From contig OX638150.1 of NCBI GenBank assembly GCA_951804945.1, forward strand, positions 94,364,001-94,428,000: a DNA stretch of 64,000 nt. Reading direction: 5' to 3'. This document shows positions 1 to 9,158 of the stretch, one piece after another; within the stretch, counting starts at the first letter, position 1; the number at the start of each line of letters is the position of its first letter. The notes under the pieces were generated by a model. The model worked only from the letters and a program-made list of their open reading frames with translations, searched no databases and had not been told where the DNA came from. The translations under genes and the position numbers were made by a program. Origin of the DNA: Podarcis cretensis. Lineage: Eukaryota.

Positions 1-954
1 CATGGTAAGATGAATGATTTGATCCCTTCTGTATTATTTATTATGCCTTTTTATCTATGAATTTTAAACTATCCATTACCAGAAATGATGCCTATTTAAA
101 TAATATTATGACAGGGAGTTTTTTCTTTTTCCTAAAAGCTCTTTGCATCGAATCTGCAGTTAATACCATAGAAGTTAAGCCTCCATACTTCTTCCAATTG
201 TTTTCAGGCTATATAATACCCTCTGTCTTGTATGGGATTATTTGCTTACTTGCCGCAGCATGCAAGAATGTGAATTGCTAATTGGTATCCAATACATTTT
301 AAATAATTAGTGATGATTGCTGTATTTGAAGTGTAAGCAATTGTAAAATGTGCTGCTTGGCAAAAGTCCAGAAAACTAACACAGTATTTGGGATAATTAT
401 AGACAGTTAAATTGCTTTGGGTGTATTAATTGATAAGGTACATAAAAAGTGAAGGAGAAGAGAAAAGTAAAAGTGTCTAAAATTCTGTGTGGGTCCACAG
501 ATTTGCTTCTTAGGTTCTGGCCTTATATTATTTGGAAATGTGAGTAATTTGGGGCCTACAATTATTATTTGATTTAAGTTATTTGGCCTTTACACTTCAT
601 TTATACTGACACCGTTAATAAAAAGAATCATAGCAGTGAGCAGCATAAAATCAACAATAAAATTACATCCACAAAACAAGCACCAAATACATCATGTTGT
701 TTCAAATACACACATTTGAATAACCCGTAATAACTGTCTCCATCACTCAACTCACTTATGGGATGTTTTCTTTTGCAGAATGTTAAATACGATTACATTT
801 CTAATGAGGTTGTTCCCAGAACGGCACTGCAATGCTGGCAGCCCAACGATACCACTGTACTCCATTATAGCCTAAACACAGCACTGAGGAAGTATAAAAT
901 AGGAATGGAGGAAAACCACATTTCCCCCTCTCAGTATTCCTTCATTCCTTCATT

Positions 955-996
955 CCTTCATTGGTGTATCTGAAGAAGTGTGCATACACACGAAAG
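955..996 (+). mobile_element. Penelope-like element terminal fragment, 5' part (carries 5' half of a minimal hammerhead ribozyme); left boundary approximate
   Basis: TTGGTGTAT-CTGAAGA-A-GTGTG CATA CACAC-GAAAG; continues seamlessly at 6132 once the copia element and one TSD copy are removed. Confidence 0.75.
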
Positions 997-1321
997 TGTT
1001 GATTAGCAGTAGTGTCCAAGTGCACAGCGGAATGATGAGGAATACGTGCTCATACTCTAAGTTGCTTTATTTACATTTCAAAGCTGGTAGATTACAGAAA
1101 AACATCTTTACTCTGCCGGAGCAGAGAAAATGCATCCTCTCTCCTCTGAAGCACGGAGAGAATCACACTGTGTGAGAACAGTGAAAAAAACAGGAAACCA
1201 GTGTACGTCACATCCAGTCTCCTTTTCCCGTGGGAAACACAACAGTAATGCTGTCTGTGGAATGTAAACATTGTCTTGTGACAAGCCTTTCGCTGCACAG
1301 TGAAGAGAGCAGAAACCAACA
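997..1321 (-). repeat. 3' LTR of the copia element
   Basis: 325 bp; follows the PPT; minus-strand AATAAA at 1066-1071. Confidence 0.97.
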
Positions 1322-1333
1322 TCCTCCCCCTTT
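1322..1333 (-). promoter_or_regulatory. Polypurine tract
   Basis: Minus strand AAAGGGGGAGGA directly abuts the TG of the 3' LTR. Confidence 0.92.
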
Positions 1334-1368
1334 CTGTGAACACCACTGGGCAGCGTGTTCGTACAATA

Positions 1369-4300
1369 TCAGTACAAACCCAACTTCTGCACATAGGTAC
1401 AGTGTTGATCCCTTGATACAATCTTGGACAATACATCAGCAGGAATTTCATTACCTGGCATATAGGACACCGTTACGAGTCCCTTCTGAATACGCTCCCT
1501 AGCATGTTGCAACTTCAATTGCAAGTGCTTCGTGCTTTGCTTACAACCATCAGAATTCAGCAAAGCCAAACATGCTTTGTTGTCCTGGTAAACCTGGATT
1601 GGACATTTGACAGGAATTCTCATGTCTTTGCACAATTGTAACAACCATTCACAATCTTTGAGTGAATAAGACAGTGCATTCAGTTCAGCTTCACAAGTAC
1701 TTAAGCTAACTGTTGTTTGCTTCTTGCATGACCAATCAAATAGACCTTGATTGTACATATAGCAAACTCCAGACGTACTTTTCCTGTCTGTAGTGTCACT
1801 TCCAAAACTTGCATCTGCAAATATCTCAAGACCACCAGACTTCTGATTGTTAAATCTCAGTCTGTAATGCATAGTGCCTTTCAAATACCGCGCTATGCGT
1901 TTCAGAGCTTTCCAATCCTTAACAGTAGGATTGTTGACTTGTCTGCTTAGCAAATTACAGCTAACAGCAATGTCTGGTCTTGAACATCTGGCAATAAAGT
2001 TTAGCTTGCCTAGCACACTTCTGTACAGTGTAGTGTCAGAAAATGCTTCTTCAGTGTCATCTACCTGATAACCTGTTATCATTGGTGTGTCTACAGGGTT
2101 AGCATCCATCAGGTTTAGTTTGCCTAACACATCAGCAATTTTCCGTGACTGGTGTACTAGAATGTTACCAACTTGATCTCTCTCTATTTCCAGAGATAGG
2201 TAGTTGTTTACCTCACCAAGATCTTTCATGTCAAAGTGTTCCTTCAGTTGAGCTAGGGCGTTATTGTACATTGTGACATCATCCCAAAAGAATAAAAGAT
2301 CATCAACATAAAACAAACAATACAGTTTCTTTTGCCCCTCCTCTTTGACAAATACACATGGATCAGCTTTCCCTTGCTTAAAACCTAGAGAAAACAATAC
2401 TTCAGTGAGTTTTATGTGCCAACACCGTGCACTTTGTTTGAGACCATAAAGGGACTTTTTCAGAGCACAAACAAATCCCTGTTTTACCTGTACGCCATCA
2501 GGTGGAAGCATATAAAGTGATTCATCTAGAGATCCGTACAGAAAAGCTGTATTCACATCATGGTGACTAATGTGTAGATTCTCCTCTGCAGCTAGCTTGA
2601 GCATAAGCCTAATGCTCTCATACCTCACTGTGGGTGAGTAGGTCTCGTGATAGTCTTCACCTGGTACCTGTGCAAAACCTCTGGCTACCAATCTGGCTTT
2701 GTGTCTGACTATCTTGCCATTTTGATCAGTCTTCGCTTTGAAGACCCATTTGCTTCCACGCAGTTTCATTCCTGGAACTACTGGAACAAGTTCCCATGTT
2801 TTGTTCCTTTCCAAGGAATCAAGCTCAGCCTTCATGGCATTTAACCATGGTTCAGCTTCCTTTGAATCCAAATCCTGGATTTCTTGGAAACTTGAAGGTT
2901 CAAATACCTTCTTGGAGCTTTTAACAGCTGTTACTGCTATCTTAGCAAACTCATCAGCAAATCTCTTTGGAGGTCTGCCTTTTGTGGCTCTTTGTGACCT
3001 GCGAATTAGCCTTAGGTCTTCAACACTCTCCTCTTCCTTCTTAGGAGAAAAGCGACCTATTGTGAACAATGGTTCCTCCAATTCTTGATCAGAGCTTTCA
3101 GAGGGTCGCATAGAGGCTTTCGCAGTCTTGAAATCCTCTGAATCACCTGATTCAGTTTCAGACTCAGAATCAGAACCTTCATCAGTGGGTGTGGGTTGCT
3201 GTGGTTGCTTTTGACTATCCTCAGTCTCATCACCGTCATCAGGATAACATTGGAAAATTCCCACATTCTCCCCCCACTTAGCATTGTACTCAACACTTCT
3301 TGTGAGCTTAATAGTCTTAGAGTCAGTCATCCTTATTCTGTAAGAACCTTTCTCATAACCTAGAAAGATACCATGCAAACCACGCTTGTCTAACTTGGAG
3401 TTTTGTGGTGAGTGAACCCACATGTCAGAACCAAAAATTCTCATGTGTTTGATGTATGGTTTCTTGCCAAACATCTTCTCATAGGGGGTACAACCAATCG
3501 CTGAAGATAACCTGCGATTATAACTGTAAGTGAAACATGAGAGAGCTTCGGCCCAATAACTCTCTGGAAGATTTGCATCATGCAGCAAGGTTTTTAACCC
3601 TTGAAGCAATGTTTGATTTGCCCGTTCTGCAAGTCCATTCTGCCATGGCGAGCGAGGACTAGACAAATCGTGTTGAATTCCTTTCTCAGACAGAAAAGCT
3701 TCAAACTGCTGAGAAGTGAATTCTCCCCCGCGATCACTGAAAAGAGTTTTTACCTTGTTACCATGCACATTTTCCAACCAAGCACAGAATTCCTTGAACC
3801 TAGGAAAAGCCTCTGATTTCTGCTTGAGATTGTACACATAAATATACCTGGAAAATGCATCAATGAGAACCATGAAGTACCTATTTCCTCCCAAAGAGGG
3901 CGCTAGTGGTCCAACCAAATCAGCATGAATAATTTGGTATGGTTCTGTAGCTTGCCTACTAGACACCTTACCTTTCGCAGCCATTTTCACCTTGTTTGCT
4001 GCGCATGCCTTGCACTTCATGTGGTACCTGCAGGGTTTAATAGTCATACCTTCAACCAAGGCAGGCATTTTAGATACTGCCTCAAAACCCAAATGTCCAA
4101 ATTTTCGATGAAAATCATGAATACATTCTGCATGCAAACATTTGTTAGAACCTGCAATGCAACAAGTATCATCCTGCACAACATCATCATAATACAAAAC
4201 ATATAAACGATCAACATATTCAGCATACAATACATAATCATTTTTCTTTGTGATGATGCACCTTTTGTTCTTAAAGGAAACGTCAATGTTCCGCTCATTC

Positions 4301-5397
4301 AGCTGTCTAACGCTGAGCAAATTATGTTTGGCATCCGGCACATAAAGTACATTCTGTATCGATAAGTCCAAACTGTGAAGAACAACAGTTCCGTAGCCTT
4401 TACTGGGAATTGTGTGGTCATCTGCCTGGTGAATCGCACCTTCCTGCGGTGTAAAAGACACGAACATTCGCTTATCGTTGCACATGTGGTGGGTTGCCGC
4501 TGAATCAACAACGAAGAAAGATCTAGACGTCTTCTGGACCTCTGCAACTTTCGGAGTAAAGCGTGAGACCATTGCTTTGGGCTGCGTTGTCCTGGACACC
4601 GGACCTTTGCCTTTGCCTCGGCCTTTTCCACGCGATGAGCTTCCACTGCGCTGCTCTGTCTTGGCCCTGGGATATTTGCATTCCCTCTTCATATGGCCTA
4701 GACGTCCACACGAGTAGCATTTCACTGCCTTCAAAGCTTTGGCACCATCTGGTGGTTCCACTGCACTCAGGGATGACGTCTGTGAAGACTCCCCCTTTCC
4801 CATGCAGCTATCACCCTGGCAATCTGCTTCATTTTGAATCACGGCAGTAACATAATCCACTGTCAGCTGAGCGGTAGGCTGTACAGCAATCTGAGTCGCA
4901 ACAGACTCCCAACCTGAACCCAAAGATTGTAGTATCATGAAGGAATACACAGCCTCTGGAAAGTTGAGTCCTCTCTGTTGCAGCTCATGTCTCAGATTCT
5001 GCATCTCCATCAGATGTGTACGCACATCTCCACCTTCAGCAAGAGCCATATTATGCAGCTTGTTAAAATAAAACATAGTAGATCCAGCTTCTGTCCTCAA
5101 GTGTGCCTCCCTCAAAGCGTCCCAAATTTCTCTGGCTGAGGTCTTATCACGCAATAGACAGAGCTCTTCTGGGGATACTATCAATGTAAGAGTTCCCCTT
5201 GCTTTGGAATCTTTAGCTTTCCATGCATCTGTAATTGGAGCTGGGGGGGTATCTGTAATAACTTCAAACAGACCCTCTTTCCGCAGAATAGCCTCTGCAT
5301 AGATAACCCAGTCCACGTAGTTCTTCTTATTGAGCTTGGGAATCCCACAAGCATCCTGAAGGGCCATCATGTCTCTGGCATTAGCCTTCTGCGTCAT
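1369..5397 (-). CDS. Copia gag-pol polyprotein, about 1342 aa from the first ATG (track ORF opens at 5415 on TTG)
   Basis: Gag region, then zinc knuckle CYSCGRLGHMKREC (CX2CX4HX4C), protease VVDSAATHHM, integrase HHCC (HRKFGH...CKAC), D..D(35)E core (HADLVG / SDRGGEF / GLAERAN), GIFLGY motif, RT (KARLVARGF, LKKSLYGLKQ, YVDD) and RNase H (FADASFG, CEAE, QDN, ADVLSK). No stop or frameshift. Confidence 0.97.
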   Translation of the reverse strand: MTQKANARDMMALQDACGIPKLNKKNYVDWVIYAEAILRKEGLFEVITDTPPAPITDAWKAKDSKARGTLTLIVSPEELCLLRDKTSAREIWDALREAHLRTEAGSTMFYFNKLHNMALAEGGDVRTHLMEMQNLRHELQQRGLNFPEAVYSFMILQSLGSGWESVATQIAVQPTAQLTVDYVTAVIQNEADCQGDSCMGKGESSQTSSLSAVEPPDGAKALKAVKCYSCGRLGHMKRECKYPRAKTEQRSGSSSRGKGRGKGKGPVSRTTQPKAMVSRFTPKVAEVQKTSRSFFVVDSAATHHMCNDKRMFVSFTPQEGAIHQADDHTIPSKGYGTVVLHSLDLSIQNVLYVPDAKHNLLSVRQLNERNIDVSFKNKRCIITKKNDYVLYAEYVDRLYVLYYDDVVQDDTCCIAGSNKCLHAECIHDFHRKFGHLGFEAVSKMPALVEGMTIKPCRYHMKCKACAANKVKMAAKGKVSSRQATEPYQIIHADLVGPLAPSLGGNRYFMVLIDAFSRYIYVYNLKQKSEAFPRFKEFCAWLENVHGNKVKTLFSDRGGEFTSQQFEAFLSEKGIQHDLSSPRSPWQNGLAERANQTLLQGLKTLLHDANLPESYWAEALSCFTYSYNRRLSSAIGCTPYEKMFGKKPYIKHMRIFGSDMWVHSPQNSKLDKRGLHGIFLGYEKGSYRIRMTDSKTIKLTRSVEYNAKWGENVGIFQCYPDDGDETEDSQKQPQQPTPTDEGSDSESETESGDSEDFKTAKASMRPSESSDQELEEPLFTIGRFSPKKEEESVEDLRLIRRSQRATKGRPPKRFADEFAKIAVTAVKSSKKVFEPSSFQEIQDLDSKEAEPWLNAMKAELDSLERNKTWELVPVVPGMKLRGSKWVFKAKTDQNGKIVRHKARLVARGFAQVPGEDYHETYSPTVRYESIRLMLKLAAEENLHISHHDVNTAFLYGSLDESLYMLPPDGVQVKQGFVCALKKSLYGLKQSARCWHIKLTEVLFSLGFKQGKADPCVFVKEEGQKKLYCLFYVDDLLFFWDDVTMYNNALAQLKEHFDMKDLGEVNNYLSLEIERDQVGNILVHQSRKIADVLGKLNLMDANPVDTPMITGYQVDDTEEAFSDTTLYRSVLGKLNFIARCSRPDIAVSCNLLSRQVNNPTVKDWKALKRIARYLKGTMHYRLRFNNQKSGGLEIFADASFGSDTTDRKSTSGVCYMYNQGLFDWSCKKQTTVSLSTCEAELNALSYSLKDCEWLLQLCKDMRIPVKCPIQVYQDNKACLALLNSDGCKQSTKHLQLKLQHARERIQKGLVTVSYMPGNEIPADVLSKIVSRDQHCTYVQKLGLY

Positions 5398-5783
5398 CTC
5401 TGCTGCTTTAAACAAGCTGCTTTATACAAGCTGCGTCTCTGCTGCTTCAAGCCTCATTCCAAAGGCAAGTTCAAAAGAGCTTTCCCTCTGCTGCCCTAAA
5501 ATCATGCTGCGTCACTTCTGCAGCTGCTTCAGCCCTTTTAAAAGTTACTTTCGATTTCCCCAGCATAGCCTTCGCCTGTTCCCGGCAAACGGCCATAAAA
5601 GTTCAAAGTCCAGCCATAAAGCCATTAATTAGAAGCTGGCAGGCTGCCCGGAGCAGTAGCACATACCTCATCAATCATCTTGACGCGCAGATACCGTCCG
5701 ATCCATCCCTTTGCATTCCGATCCTTTTGCCGGCATTCTGATGACTGCGTCTTTGCTCCTTTGCCAGGAGCCCGATTCGACTT

Positions 5784-5797
5784 CTGGGCCCATAACC
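5784..5797 (-). promoter_or_regulatory. Primer-binding site complementary to the internal anticodon arm of initiator tRNA-Met (half-tRNA priming)
   Basis: Minus strand reads GGTTATGGGCCCAG, 4 nt inside the 5' LTR. The plus strand CTGGGCCCATAACC is the tRNAiMet anticodon-arm sequence, not the tRNA 3'-CCA end. Confidence 0.92.
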
Positions 5798-5801
5798 AAA
5801 A

Positions 5802-6126
5802 TGTTGATTAGCAGTAGTGTCCAAGTGCACAGCGGAATGATGAGGAATACGTGCTCATACTCTAAGTTGCTTTATTTACATTTCAAAGCTGGTAGATTAC
5901 AGAAAAACATCTTTACTCTGCCGGAGCAGAGAAAATGCATCCTCTCTCCTCTGAAGCACGGAGAGAATCACACTGTGTGAGAACAGTGAAAAAAACAGGA
6001 AACCAGTGTACGTCACATCCAGTCTCCTTTTCCCGTGGGAAACACAACAGTAATGCTGTCTGTGGAATGTAAACATTGTCTTGTGACAAGCCTTTCGCTG
6101 CACAGTGAAGAGAGCAGAAACCAACA
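5802..6126 (-). repeat. 5' LTR of the copia element
   Basis: 325 bp; reads identical to 997-1321 on manual comparison; adjacent to the PBS. Confidence 0.97.
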
Positions 6127-6235
6127 GAAAGCTCATACCAAGTACTAACTTAGTTGGTCTTTAAGGTGCTACTGGAAGGAATTTTTTTATTTTGTTTTGA
6201 CTATGGCAGACCAACACGGCTACCTATCTGTAACT
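6127..6235 (+). mobile_element. Penelope-like element terminal fragment, 3' part
   Basis: GAAAGCTCATACCAA...TTAGTTGGTCTTTAAGGTGCTACTGG...GCAGACCAACACGGCTACC, recognised from memory as a common reptile Penelope terminal repeat. Confidence 0.75.
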
Positions 6236-6395
6236 TCATTCCTGCCTTATTCAAACCTCTGCCCATGTTTAAAATAGCCACTTTCCCCTATCCCTTCTCG
6301 CTCTCCCATTCCTCAGCTGCCCCACATGAGAAATGTAAAGGATGTGGACCCCTCAAATATTCCCATGATACTTTATTCAACCCTGTGTTCTTGTA

Positions 6396-6397
<2 letters not shown>

Positions 6398-6430
<33 letters not shown>
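6398..6430. repeat. (TAA)n microsatellite
   Basis: Read directly; similar tracts at 18680-18724 and 35126-35161. Confidence 0.95.
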
Positions 6431-6432
<2 letters not shown>

Positions 6433-7391
6433 GAAATCGATTCCTCACCAGTGTTCTGCTAGTTCCTTTGGAGCAGTTACACCAACAGTAACAAAATGTT
6501 TGGTATTAGTATAAGACAGCTTTCTGTAGACAGATAAATCAAATGATAACAAATTTAAAGTGCTTAAAAAGAACCTGTATCCAAACATCTTGACTGGGCT
6601 TAGTTTCAGCGATTACACTTAAAGAATTTTTTTGCTGGTTTTCATTTGTCATATTTCTATTTTGGTAGCATTTTATTTCATTTATTATTGCATTTATATA
6701 TTGCCTTCCTGCCAAGGCACACAGTACAGTTTTTCAATATTTATCTATATTTTATCTTATATTTCCCCGAAGTATTGTTACTTTCTCTGAATCCTTGGCA
6801 TGGAAAGAACTAACATAAAATGAATGAATAAATGCTTGCAACATACAGTATTTGAAATGGTATTCTACCTTTTCTGTAGGAATTTGTCTATCATTGTTAT
6901 TAGTCCTGCTAGCTTAATTCCAGATCCAGACACAATAAGCCCTAAATAACAGTTGTGGAGAAACAGTGGTTGAGAGCTGTTGCCTTCAAACCCTATCTGC
7001 GGGCTCCATGGAGGCATCCGGTTCCTACATTATTATGCTTGGTTCAGAAAAAAAAATTCAAGAACCAACATAGAGCTCCTTGTGTTATATCCTTGAAAGC
7101 TATATAGCTGAACTAGTGTGAAGCAGTCATATCATTAAAACTTTTTGATGTTGTAGGGTGTTTGTTTGTTTGTTTGTTTGCGGGGTAAGGAATTCAGTTT
7201 GATTAAATATGCTAAATCCTAATCTAAAAATGCTAGCAGCCACTCAGGAAGCTGACATGTTTTTTTGGGGGGGGGCAGTACGACGATGACACAGTTAAAA
7301 GTAACACATTAACAAAAACTATTCATTCTGATTCTTTTTAGTATTTTGACATTTGTGTACACATGCATTAAAACAACAAATATTTTAAACA

Positions 7392-7465
7392 TCACAATTT
7401 CAAGACATTTATGTAATCTGCGTTCTCCCCTTCGCTCAGTGGACTCTGAGAGTGAGGATAATGAA
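7392..7465 (-). CDS. Candidate terminal coding exon of an unidentified host gene (xHYPHSQSPLSEGENADYINVLKL*)
   Basis: Acceptor TCTGCCTTTCCAG; open in phase 1, matching the exons at 18536 and 39516; unique sequence retaining CpGs. No homolog recognised. Confidence 0.3.
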
Positions 7466-7534
7466 CTGGAAAGGCAGATTTCATGACTCATGGGTGTGCA
7501 TTACACATGTGCTCAATCCTTTTAGAACTTACAA

Positions 7535-7848
7535 TATTTAAATGTCTGTCACAAGGAAGATGGAGCAAGCTTGTTTCTTCCCACTTCGAAGGCTAAGACC
7601 CAAACCAATGGCTTCGAGTTAGAAGAACGGACATTCCGACTAAACACCAAGAAGAACTTTCTGACTGTAAGAGCTGTTCAGCAGCAGAACAGACTCCCTC
7701 AGAAGGTGGTGGTCTCTCCTTCTTTGAAGATATTGAAGTAGAGGTTCGAGAGCCATCCGTCATGCATGATCTAGTTGAGATTTGTGCATTCCAGGGGTAG
7801 ACTAGATGACCTTTGCGGTCCTGTCCAACTCTACAATTTTATGATTCC
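7535..7848 (+). mobile_element. CR1 LINE 3' fragment, degraded
   Basis: AAGAACTTTCTGACTGTAAGAGCTGTTCAGCAG...GGTAGACTAGATGACC...TCCAACTCTACAATTTTATGATTC, a typical CR1 3' end. Confidence 0.8.
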
Positions 7849-7995
7849 AGTCATGTGAAAGCCCACACAGCCGAAAGGTGTTTGGTTTAGTTTGGATGGC
7901 GTGTTTAGCATCAGCTTTAAGATAGGCTTAGTACTGTGGCATCAGAGTTCTATAGAAAGTGAAGACTTTCAGCCAATGCCTTCTTTTGAAATTAA

Positions 7996-8237
7996 TTGTG
8001 GTACCTCAGGTTAAGAACTTAATTCGTTATTGAGGTCCGTTCTTAACCTGAAATTGTTCTTAACCTGAAGCACCACTTTAGCTAATGGGGCCTCCCACTG
8101 CCGCCGCGCCACCACCGCACAATTTCTGTTCTCATCCTGAAGCAAAGTTCTTAACCCGAGGTATTTTTTCTGGGTTAGCGGAGTCTGTAACCTGAAGTGT
8201 CTGTAACCTGAAGCATCTGTAACCCAAGGTACCACTG
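7996..8237 (-). mobile_element. Tc1/mariner (Tigger/pogo-like) MITE, family A copy 1
   Basis: GTGGTACCTC...GGTACCACTG terminal inverted repeats; internal sequence shared with six other copies. Confidence 0.9.
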
Positions 8238-9158
8238 TATTTTAAAAACATGTGATTATCCTGAATGTTTACAGTGTCATGAAACATGATCTTACTATCT
8301 AACCTTCTCATGAACAGAATAGGTTTTAATAAATGATTATAGCAAAAAAAAAATCCATATTGATACAATAAACTGAATTTATTAAGATATCTGAGCAATC
8401 AGAGTTTAAGGTTAACATTAAGACTTCATTGATGTACTCTAGTAAAACTAGTCTGGTAAAAAAAAAAGTAAGTTATGTATACATTAATAAATGACAGCAT
8501 TTGTTCAAATTAATATAGTACAGTCTTGCTTCCATCTTTTGACCTGCGGTATCAAAGGCACAGGAAATGAGCTTTTATTTATGAAAATCAAGCTTTGCCT
8601 ACAGCTGGATAAGGTTGCAATAATTTATTGTACATTCATAAAGTAACTGTTATGAAGCTCAAAACTGGCATTCAGGTGAGGTAGAATGAAGTACCAATGA
8701 CATAGGATCTATCCCTCATATTATTAGTGGAGCTGCATATACACAAGCATTACCTAACCATTCATTCACATAGTTGATGCTAGCCAACATATTTAAATGC
8801 ATTCCAATAGTTGATGCCATAGAAGAGCCTTAAACAGCTGTGCAGTGATATAAACAGCAATAATTCACTGAGGGATGCTGCTAGATCTGTGGCAACAAAG
8901 ACACTGATTAATCAACATGATATCACAATAGCAGCCTGCAGTAATGTGCTCAGGGCATTTTTATGCAATAGTACAATAGAGGAGGGTGAGGAACAGAATA
9001 GAGACCAAGGTGAAATGTATTTCTATGTATTTCTGCACGACATTCTTGTCTTTATAAGAGCAGCATACAGGGTTTCATTGCTAGGGAATTGCTTCAAGCA
9101 TTTAAATAAAAAGTGTGTGTGTATACACTCTCTCTCACACACAAACACACACACCACT

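What the first reader, a model, noticed from the sequence alone, without database searches (positions are those of the whole stretch)
961..6141. Copia retrotransposon inserted into the GAAA catalytic core of a Penelope hammerhead ribozyme
Seen: removing 997-6131 restores TTGGTGTAT-CTGAAGA-A-GTGTG-CATA-CACAC-GAAA-GCTC-ATACCAA. The TSD (GAAAG) is the conserved GAAA box plus one base. Established: Penelope-like elements carry minimal type I hammerheads with a palindromic stem III, proposed to cleave as dimers. Inference: the insertion separates the CUGANGA half from the cleavage-site half and inactivates the motif. If other copies of this copia family sit at the same position, this would be a copia lineage targeting another retroelement's ribozyme. 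A single event may be chance, since these Penelope fragments are likely abundant.
Basis: partly seen in the sequence, partly recalled or inferred. Interest (0 to 1): 0.8.

Follow-up and report, generated by a model that had tools for sequence, protein, structure and literature searches.

The report
Young Copia inside a Penelope-type hammerhead repeat
A very recent, intact Copia jumping gene landed in the middle of a hammerhead-ribozyme motif carried by a short repeat present tens of thousands of times in this lizard genome; one such hit is about what chance predicts, so this is an ordinary nested insertion.

Summary
A 5,130-bp Ty1/copia element lies on the minus strand at 997-6126. It has two 325-bp LTRs that are 100% identical, TG..CA ends, a perfect 5-bp target duplication GAAAG (992-996 and 6127-6131) and one open 1,348-codon gag-pol frame.

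Removing 997-6131 restores a minimal type I hammerhead with every trait published for Penelope-like elements. Contigs from three DNA runs join 991 to 6127 directly. More than 100 contigs per run read ...CTGAAGAAGTGTGCATGCACAC just before GAAAGCTCATACC. So the two flanks are contiguous in other copies of a very high-copy repeat of about 138 nt.

The insertion does split this copy of the motif, and each half keeps a GAAAG.

The idea of a Copia lineage that targets ribozymes has no support. Rough depth figures suggest about 3x10^4 motif copies and thousands of Copia copy-equivalents. That predicts a few such hits per genome by chance. GAAAG also fits the generic 5-bp target logo of LTR retrotransposons, and the polyprotein shows no extra targeting domain.

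The scan had already noted this same Copia copy as s1-840001. Interest is low.

The parts
950..962 (+). Probable left copy of the host repeat's own target duplication (TCATTCCTTCATT). It lies in a short CTTCATTC tandem, so its exact length is ambiguous.
   Evidence: 11 of 13 letters match 6236-6248. A 10-mer, CTTCATTCCT, is shared with 6234-6243. Scan note s1-839466 reports a 13-bp duplication for a hammerhead-bearing Penelope family in this genome.
963..996 (+). 5' part of the ~138-nt hammerhead-bearing Penelope-type repeat: helix I 5' strand 963-969, C3-A9 box CTGAAGA 970-976, unpaired A 977, helix II with loop 978-991, G12-A15.1 plus G15.2 at 992-996.
   Evidence: Read directly. Motif scan. 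High-copy depth, and joints from 6235 back to 964-968 that mark the unit start.
992..996 (.). Left copy of the Copia 5-bp target-site duplication, GAAAG.
   Evidence: Empty-site joints 991->6127 have 5 letters that fit both sides.
997..1321 (-). 3' LTR of the minus-strand Copia (325 bp).
   Evidence: 100% identical to 5802-6126, with TG..CA ends.
1322..1335 (-). Polypurine tract (AGAAAGGGGGAGGA on the minus strand), directly 5' of the 3' LTR.
   Evidence: Read directly.
1369..5415 (-). Uninterrupted gag-pol reading frame (1,348 codons; first ATG at 5397).
   Evidence: ORF list and translation. Pfam hits: Retrotran_gag_2 41-198, zf-CCHC 232-247, Pol_BBD 301-376, gag_pre-integrs 403-475, rve 490-590, SH3_retrovirus 649-710, RVT_2 871-1113.
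5784..5801 (-). Primer-binding site region next to the 5' LTR (TGGTTATGGGCCCAG). It looks complementary to the anticodon stem-loop of initiator tRNA-Met, which would be half-tRNA priming.
   Evidence: Sequence read. The tRNA match rests on my memory of the vertebrate tRNA-iMet sequence and on scan note s1-840029; it was not tested here.
5802..6126 (-). 5' LTR of the minus-strand Copia (325 bp).
6127..6131 (.). Right copy of the Copia target-site duplication, GAAAG.
6132..6235 (+). 3' part of the host repeat: C16.2-U16.1-C17 at 6132-6134 (predicted cleavage after 6134), helix I 3' strand 6135-6139, then about 96 nt of repeat body containing the inverted pair GTTGGTCT / AGACCAAC.
   Evidence: Read directly. 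Highest depth bin of the stretch (2.8 million against about 65 for single-copy contigs). Many contigs end at 6235 and continue into unrelated flanks.
6236..6248 (+). Probable right copy of the host repeat's target duplication (TCATTCCTGCCTT).

Best explanation
This is an ordinary nested transposon insertion. An old, non-coding, roughly 138-nt repeat of the Penelope-like / non-LTR-retrozyme kind inserted first. It carries a minimal, dimer-type type I hammerhead at its 5' end, and it occupies 963-996 plus 6132-6235, with a degraded target duplication of about 13 bp. Much later, probably within about the last one to two million years (identical LTRs; the date is my inference), a Ty1/copia element integrated into it. 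Its integrase made staggered cuts 5 bp apart around G12-A13-A14-A15.1-G15.2 of the hammerhead DNA, and repair duplicated GAAAG. The two ribozyme halves are now 5.1 kb apart, so this copy can no longer fold as a compact hammerhead. The site was not chosen because it is a ribozyme. The repeat is so abundant, and the Copia family so numerous, that a few such hits per genome are expected by chance. Within the repeat, GAAAG is the kind of pentamer (A/T-rich centre, non-T on the left, non-A on the right) that LTR-element integrases favour generally. Losing one ribozyme copy among tens of thousands has no foreseeable consequence.
For: Shown:
- LTRs identical over 325 bp, TG..CA ends, a perfect 5-bp TSD, and an open gag-PR-IN-RT frame in Copia domain order.
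- Empty-site joints 991->6127 in 3, 6 and 3 contigs of X1, X2 and X5. More than 100 contigs per organism-A run carry the 5' hammerhead half directly before GAAAGCTC.
- The motif has all emergent traits of PLE min-HHRs: an unpaired base between A9 and G10.1, a G10.1-C11.1 pair, palindromic 15.1-16.1 (AGCU), and a short helix I.

Rough abundance, all:
- Single-copy contigs have depth 61-67.
- The 3' repeat part has about 5x10^6 per position, or about 8x10^4 copy-equivalents.
- The 5' hammerhead half has about 1.8x10^6, or about 3x10^4.
- The Copia body has 2-5x10^5, or thousands of copy-equivalents at 85% identity or more.

In a genome of about 1.7 Gb (the contig total of X1 is 1.64 Gb), the 46-nt motif then covers about 0.08% of positions. 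About 5,000 Copia insertions would give about 4 chance hits in the motif and about 0.6 with the TSD overlapping GAAA.

Other points:
- One motif per 64-kb window, as seen here, matches that density.
- The generic 5-bp TSD logo V-WWW-B comes from plant LTR retrotransposons. GAAAG fits it, as do only 14 of the unit's 136 pentamers.
- Pfam finds no extra DNA-binding or targeting domain.
Against: - For this single insertion taken alone, the prior chance of landing in the 46-nt motif is only about 10^-3, and about 10^-4 on the GAAA box.
- In the roughly 47 Mb this scan has read (734 windows), only about 0.1 such event is expected, so the find is mildly unusual.
- The copy numbers come from summed contig depths. 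The tool warns these are not copy numbers, so they could be off several-fold.
- Flanks of other Copia copies were not examined, so targeting is not excluded.
- The TSD logo comes from plants, not from this family.
Confidence: 0.85

Rival explanations
1. Sequence-specific or element-specific targeting. This Copia lineage would direct integration to the hammerhead core of Penelope-type repeats, a safe-haven strategy comparable to R2 in rDNA or Ty1/Ty3 at Pol III genes.
For: The TSD coincides exactly with the most conserved box of the motif. The per-insertion chance of that is about 10^-4 (derived). The family is young and numerous, so a safe-haven strategy would be advantageous (inference).
Against: - There is only one case.
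- No scan note pairs Copia with Penelope or hammerhead, although at least 15 Copia notes and 162 hammerhead notes exist for this genome (unchecked AI notes, weak evidence).
- One noted copy sits in a gene intron.
- The polyprotein has no non-standard domain.
- There is no palindromic or extended consensus around the TSD.
- The expected number of chance hits genome-wide is at least one.
Confidence: 0.05
2. A mild structural hot spot. The hammerhead DNA, a bendable A-tract pentamer beside the 14-bp palindrome GTGTGCAT(G/A)CACAC, would be a somewhat favoured integrase substrate. LTR elements in general would then hit this position a few-fold more often than random, without recognising the ribozyme as such.
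For: Plant LTR retrotransposons prefer V-WWW-B pentamers and insertion sites near palindromes (PMC6911290). GAAAG lies immediately 3' of the helix II palindrome.
Against: The preference was shown in plants only. It was small in effect and stronger for Ty3/gypsy than for Ty1/copia. Nothing was tested in this genome.
Confidence: 0.1

Closest known systems
Minimal hammerhead ribozymes (min-HHR) of Penelope-like elements (Cervera & de la Pena 2014, PMC4209133); the PAc (Poseidon) hammerhead of Anolis carolinensis (PMC11167929)
   Same: Type I topology. CUGANGA and GAAA boxes. An unpaired base between A9 and G10.1. A G10.1-C11.1 pair. No loop 3, with palindromic 15.1-16.1 (AGCU), which implies a dimeric active form. 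A short helix I of 4-5 bp. Thousands of dispersed copies per genome, mostly outside full elements.
   Different: Helix II here is 5 bp, against 7-8 bp in Schistosoma. This copy is a 138-nt non-coding unit with no reverse-transcriptase ORF beside it. Cleavage was not tested. In the PAc element the ribozyme overlaps the ORF start, which is not the case here.
Animal non-LTR retrozymes: non-autonomous, PLE-derived hammerhead repeats (PMC7229834; bioRxiv 10.64898/2026.07.22.740005)
   Same: A short non-coding unit with one type I hammerhead. Head-to-tail joints in other copies (6235->968). Reptile family consensus lengths average 176 bp.
   Different: This locus holds a single dispersed monomer, not a tandem array. 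Circular RNA was not examined.
Ty1/copia LTR retrotransposons (Pseudoviridae), in particular half-tRNA-primed elements such as Drosophila copia (Hemivirus; from my own knowledge)
   Same: TG..CA LTRs, a 5-bp TSD, integrase placed before reverse transcriptase, Pfam RVT_2 and Retrotran_gag_2, and a PBS that looks complementary to the anticodon arm of tRNA-iMet (the tRNA match is from memory).
   Different: It sits in a vertebrate (lizard, by the scan's notes). The LTRs are very short at 325 bp. No phylogeny was made here.
Nested LTR-retrotransposon insertions and generic integrase target preferences (Jedlicka et al. 2019, PMC6911290; Tos17 ANGTT-TSD-AACNT)
   Same: A 5-bp TSD with an A/T-rich centre, non-T on the left and non-A on the right. 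A palindrome adjacent to the site.
   Different: The host element is a Penelope-type repeat, not another LTR element. No flanking palindromic consensus like that of Tos17 is visible.
Truly site-specific retroelements (R2 in 28S rDNA; Ty1/Ty3 upstream of Pol III genes; from my own knowledge and PMC5035012)
   Same: Only the idea of a retroelement landing in a defined, repeated, dispensable sequence.
   Different: Those show hundreds of independent insertions at one site and a known tethering or endonuclease mechanism. Here there is one event and no candidate mechanism.

Membership tests
Ty1/copia LTR retrotransposon | Two direct LTRs with TG...CA termini | tested here: met
   997-1321 and 5802-6126, 325 bp, 100% identical, TGTTG...CAACA.
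Ty1/copia LTR retrotransposon | 5-bp target-site duplication | tested here: met
   GAAAG at 992-996 and 6127-6131. Other repeat copies carry a single GAAAG.
Ty1/copia LTR retrotransposon | Domain order gag - protease - integrase - reverse transcriptase, with Copia-type RT (RVT_2) and gag (Retrotran_gag_2) | tested here: met
   Pfam: gag 41-198, zinc knuckle 232-247, Pol_BBD 301-376, integrase 403-618, RVT_2 871-1113 with E 2.7e-68. RNase H was not reported as a separate hit.
Ty1/copia LTR retrotransposon | PBS next to the 5' LTR and PPT next to the 3' LTR | tested here: inconclusive
   A purine tract at 1322-1335(-) is present. The PBS-like string at 5784-5798(-) was compared with tRNA-iMet from memory only.
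PLE minimal hammerhead (min-HHR) | Catalytic boxes C3-U4-G5-A6-N7-G8-A9 and G12-A13-A14, and an A15.1-U16.1 pair followed by H17 | tested here: met
   CTGAAGA 970-976, GAAA 992-995, T6133, C6134.
PLE minimal hammerhead (min-HHR) | Unpaired nucleotide between A9 and G10.1, and a conserved G10.1-C11.1 pair closing helix II | tested here: met
   A977 is unpaired, G978 pairs with C991, and helix II is 5 bp (GTGTG/CACAC). The criteria come from PMC4209133.
PLE minimal hammerhead (min-HHR) | No loop 3, and palindromic positions 15.1-16.1 that allow a dimeric helix III | tested here: met
   A995-G996-C6132-T6133 reads AGCT in the restored site and in other copies.
PLE minimal hammerhead (min-HHR) | Short helix I (4-5 bp) directly abutting C3 and position 17 | tested here: met
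   T969-A6135, A968-T6136, T967-A6137 and G966-C6138, then a bulged T965 and G964-C6139. That is 4 bp plus 1. The helix is weak: the free-energy minimum prefers a shifted register.
PLE minimal hammerhead (min-HHR) | Member of a multi-copy consensus family in the genome | tested here: met
   More than 100 contigs per run carry the same 5' half in front of GAAAGCTC. Depth is about 10^4-10^5 times single copy.
PLE minimal hammerhead (min-HHR) | Located in a pseudo-LTR flanking a PLE RT/GIY-YIG ORF | tested here: not met
   The unit is about 138 nt, non-coding and bounded by its own target duplication. Like most published min-HHRs, it is a dispersed single motif. The link to PLEs is therefore by motif type and insertion style (head-to-head and head-to-tail joints), not by an adjacent ORF.
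PLE minimal hammerhead (min-HHR) | Match to an Rfam hammerhead covariance model | tested here: inconclusive
   No Rfam hit in the window at gathering score, nor on 930-996 as a truncated match. The copy is split, and the tool cannot take a restored sequence. No intact copy could be fetched.
PLE minimal hammerhead (min-HHR) | Self-cleavage after position 17 | not testable with these tools
   This needs transcription of monomer and tandem-dimer RNAs. The predicted energy of the dimeric hammerhead fold (-10.1 kcal/mol) is well above the dimer minimum (-19.9). That agrees with the low in vitro activity reported for min-HHRs.
Target-specific retrotransposon | Many independent insertions at the same sequence position | not testable with these tools
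The single read-laying run had only Logan contigs, which break at repeat borders. There is no other Copia in the window.
Target-specific retrotransposon | A dedicated targeting module (extra DNA- or chromatin-binding domain, or a site-specific endonuclease) | tested here: not met
   Only the standard Copia domains appear in Pfam. The IN-RT linker is an acidic, Ser-rich low-complexity stretch.

The most novel reading that the evidence does not exclude
This recently expanded lizard Copia family preferentially integrates at the GAAAG of Penelope-type hammerhead repeats. It would use another retroelement's ribozyme DNA as a harmless landing pad.
Probability: 0.05. Interest if true: 0.6.

Novelty: new member of a known kind. 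Interest (0 to 1): 0.15.

Why it matters
As it stands, little. It is a clean textbook example of a nested insertion. It fixes the order of events (Penelope-type repeat first, Copia very recently), and it confirms that lizards carry both an apparently still intact Copia family and tens of thousands of minimal hammerhead motifs. It would matter only if a genome-wide flank survey showed recurrent hits at the same position. Sequence-specific targeting by a Ty1/copia integrase, aimed at another retroelement's ribozyme, has not been described.

Tried and rejected
- Rfam search of the whole window at gathering score, and of 930-996 as a 3'-truncated hammerhead. Neither gave a hammerhead hit. This is uninformative because the copy is split and minimal hammerheads lack helix III.
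- Search for other copies of the host repeat or of the Copia in the window. None was found; only an (AAT)n match appeared.
- Two scans of metagenome contigs for an intact copy of the motif, to use as an Rfam or covariation source. Both found nothing.
- The look-up of encoding contigs, to fetch other insertions with the same polyprotein.
- Supplement of the Anolis PAc paper, searched for the motif letters. The sequence there is printed in blocks of ten, so nothing usable came back.
- A second CUGAUGA-stem-GAAA at 3185-3156(-) inside the Copia ORF. Rejected as chance, because it fails A15.1-U16.1 and has G at position 17.
- Reading the contig ends at 993 (X1 and X2) as evidence for or against an empty allele. 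Rejected, because contigs simply break in the repeat.
- Minimum-free-energy folds of monomer and dimer. These do not select the hammerhead fold, so they are neither support nor refutation.
Full report
**Anatomy of the insertion**

The window holds two direct repeats at 997-1321 and 5802-6126. They are 325 bp long, identical at every column, and begin with TGTTG and end with CAACA. The five bases outside each end are GAAAG, at 992-996 and 6127-6131.

Between the repeats, the minus strand carries one open frame at 1369-5415, with 1,348 codons and a first ATG at 5397. Its Pfam hits run in Copia order:
- Retrotran_gag_2
- zinc knuckle
- Pol_BBD
- gag_pre-integrs
- rve
- SH3_retrovirus
- RVT_2 (E 2.7e-68)

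A purine tract at 1322-1335 (minus strand) abuts the 3' LTR. A PBS-like string at 5784-5798 (minus strand) follows the 5' LTR. This is an intact and very young Ty1/copia element, as scan note s1-840001 had also said.

**The interrupted sequence**

In hammerhead numbering:

| Part | Coordinates |
|---|---|
| Helix I, 5' strand | 963-969 |
| C3-A9 (CUGAAGA) | 970-976 |
| Unpaired A | 977 |
| Helix II (GUGUG/CACAC) with loop CAUA | 978-991 |
| G12-A13-A14-A15.1 | 992-995 |
| G15.2 | 996 |
| C16.2 | 6132 |
| U16.1 | 6133 |
| C17, with cleavage after it | 6134 |
| Helix I, 3' strand | 6135-6139 |

Cervera and de la Pena (PMC4209133) list traits that emerged in the minimal hammerheads of Penelope-like elements without being part of their search descriptor:
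- a conserved G10.1-C11.1 pair
- palindromic positions 15.2-16.2 with no loop 3
- a short helix I of 4-5 bp

All of these are present here. Helix I is weak: 4 bp, a bulge, then 1 bp. Free-energy folding does not pick the hammerhead conformation, for either the monomer or the dimer. That fits the low in vitro activity reported for these motifs, but it proves nothing either way.

**The flanks belong together**

I laid contigs of four public runs on 600-6390. Runs X1 and X2 (organism A) and X5 (organism B) contain contigs that join 991 directly to 6127, with five letters fitting either side. That is the restored site with a single GAAAG. In 109, 119 and 17 contigs of those runs, the letters preceding 6127 read ...CTGAAGAAGTGTGCATGCACAC. 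Contigs that stop matching at 996 continue with CTCATACCAAG.

The family consensus thus has loop CAUG, where this copy has CAUA. Otherwise it is the same motif.

Depth over the flanks is enormous. The bin 6032-6225 averages 2.8 million in X1, whereas contigs covering the unique flank have depth 61-67.

Many contigs end at 6235 and run into unrelated sequence. Others join 6235 back to 964-968 (head-to-tail) or join the two strands (head-to-head). So the unit is about 138 nt, at 963-996 plus 6132-6235.

The unit is flanked by TCATTCCTTCATT and TCATTCCTGCCTT, which match at 11 of 13 positions. This is probably its own decayed target duplication. Scan note s1-839466 reports a constant 13-bp duplication for a hammerhead-bearing Penelope family in this genome.

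There is no ORF in the unit. It is a non-autonomous, Penelope-type or non-LTR-retrozyme-type repeat. Published reptile retrozyme families average 176 bp.

**Effect of the insertion**

The integrase cuts bracket G12 to G15.2. The break therefore lies inside the AGCU helix III palindrome, and each side keeps a GAAAG. The enzyme half (CUGAAGA, helix II, GAAA) and the substrate half (UC, helix I 3' strand) are now 5,135 nt apart. This copy is therefore disabled as a compact ribozyme. That conclusion is an inference from structure. As an isolated monomer of a dimer-type motif, it may have been inactive already.

**Targeting or chance**

I could not read the flanks of other Copia copies, for three reasons:
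- The window holds no other Copia or solo LTR.

What can be done is an order-of-magnitude estimate. The tool warns that summed contig depth is not a copy number.

| Sequence | Depth | Copy-equivalents (depth / ~65) |
|---|---|---|
| 3' body of the repeat | ~5x10^6 per position | ~8x10^4 |
| 5' hammerhead half | ~1.8x10^6 per position | ~3x10^4 |
| Copia body, at 85% identity or more | 2-5x10^5 | 3,000-9,000 |

One motif in this 64-kb window agrees with about 3x10^4 copies per genome.

In about 1.7 Gb, the 46-nt motif covers about 0.08% of positions. The eight insertion positions whose TSD touches GAAA cover about 0.013%. About 5,000 insertions then give about 4 chance hits in the motif and about 0.6 on the GAAA box. 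In the roughly 47 Mb read by the scan so far (734 windows), about 0.1 hit is expected. That is mildly unusual, but it was found after the fact among many possible "interesting" targets.

Three further points weigh against targeting:
- GAAAG fits the generic 5-bp TSD logo of LTR retrotransposons: an A/T-rich trinucleotide, non-T on the left and non-A on the right. Such elements also tend to insert near palindromes (PMC6911290). Only 14 of the unit's 136 pentamers fit that logo, and GAAAG lies next to the 14-bp helix II palindrome.
- Pfam shows no domain beyond the standard Copia set.
- No scan note pairs Copia with Penelope or hammerhead, among 15 Copia notes and 162 hammerhead notes. These are unchecked AI notes, so this counts only weakly.

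**Verdict**

The identification of both elements, and of the disruption, is supported. The targeting idea is unsupported, and chance is sufficient to explain the event. I put targeting at about 5% and a mild generic hot-spot effect at about 10%. Both elements are members of known kinds. The event is an ordinary nested insertion and its interest is low.

**Limits**

- The organism is called a lizard only on the scan's notes. I did not verify it.

Noticed in passing
window 997-6126, with runs X1/X2 against X5: The Copia family looks massively expanded in organism A. Summed contig depth is 2-5x10^5 against about 65 for single-copy contigs, and about 9,000 contigs are at least 99% alike. In organism B the figures are about 600 against about 9. 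This suggests a recent, lineage-specific burst.
   Followed up: partly
window 1186-5467, run X6: A small run guessed to be RNA (organism A) holds 200-600-nt contigs that are 97-99% alike over most of the Copia. It also holds a contig with an uninterrupted hammerhead junction. This may mean both elements are transcribed, but the library type is unverified.
   Followed up: no
window 5784-5801 (-): The PBS-like string TGGTTATGGGCCCAG follows the 5' LTR. It looks complementary to the anticodon arm of initiator tRNA-Met, which would be half-tRNA priming as in Drosophila copia. Scan note s1-840029 already covers it. The tRNA match is from memory only.
   Followed up: no
window 3156-3185 (-): A second CUGAUGA - 6-bp stem - GAAA pattern lies inside the acidic, Ser-rich linker of the Copia ORF, followed by an 8-bp hairpin. 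It fails A15.1-U16.1 and has G at position 17, so it is a chance look-alike.
   Followed up: yes
window 940-962 and 6234-6248: The host repeat sits in a short CTTCATTC tandem. TCATTCCTTCATT and TCATTCCTGCCTT match at 11 of 13 positions and flank the 138-nt unit. This is probably the decayed ~13-bp target duplication typical of this Penelope-type family.
   Followed up: partly
window 6152-6217: The repeat body contains the inverted pair GTTGGTCT (6152-6159) and AGACCAAC (6209-6216) around a T-rich stretch. This is a possible conserved stem of the repeat RNA. It was not analysed.
   Followed up: no
window 6397-6432: An (AAT)12 microsatellite. Similar tracts occur at about 18680, 26160, 35130, 53245 and 63230.
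   Followed up: no
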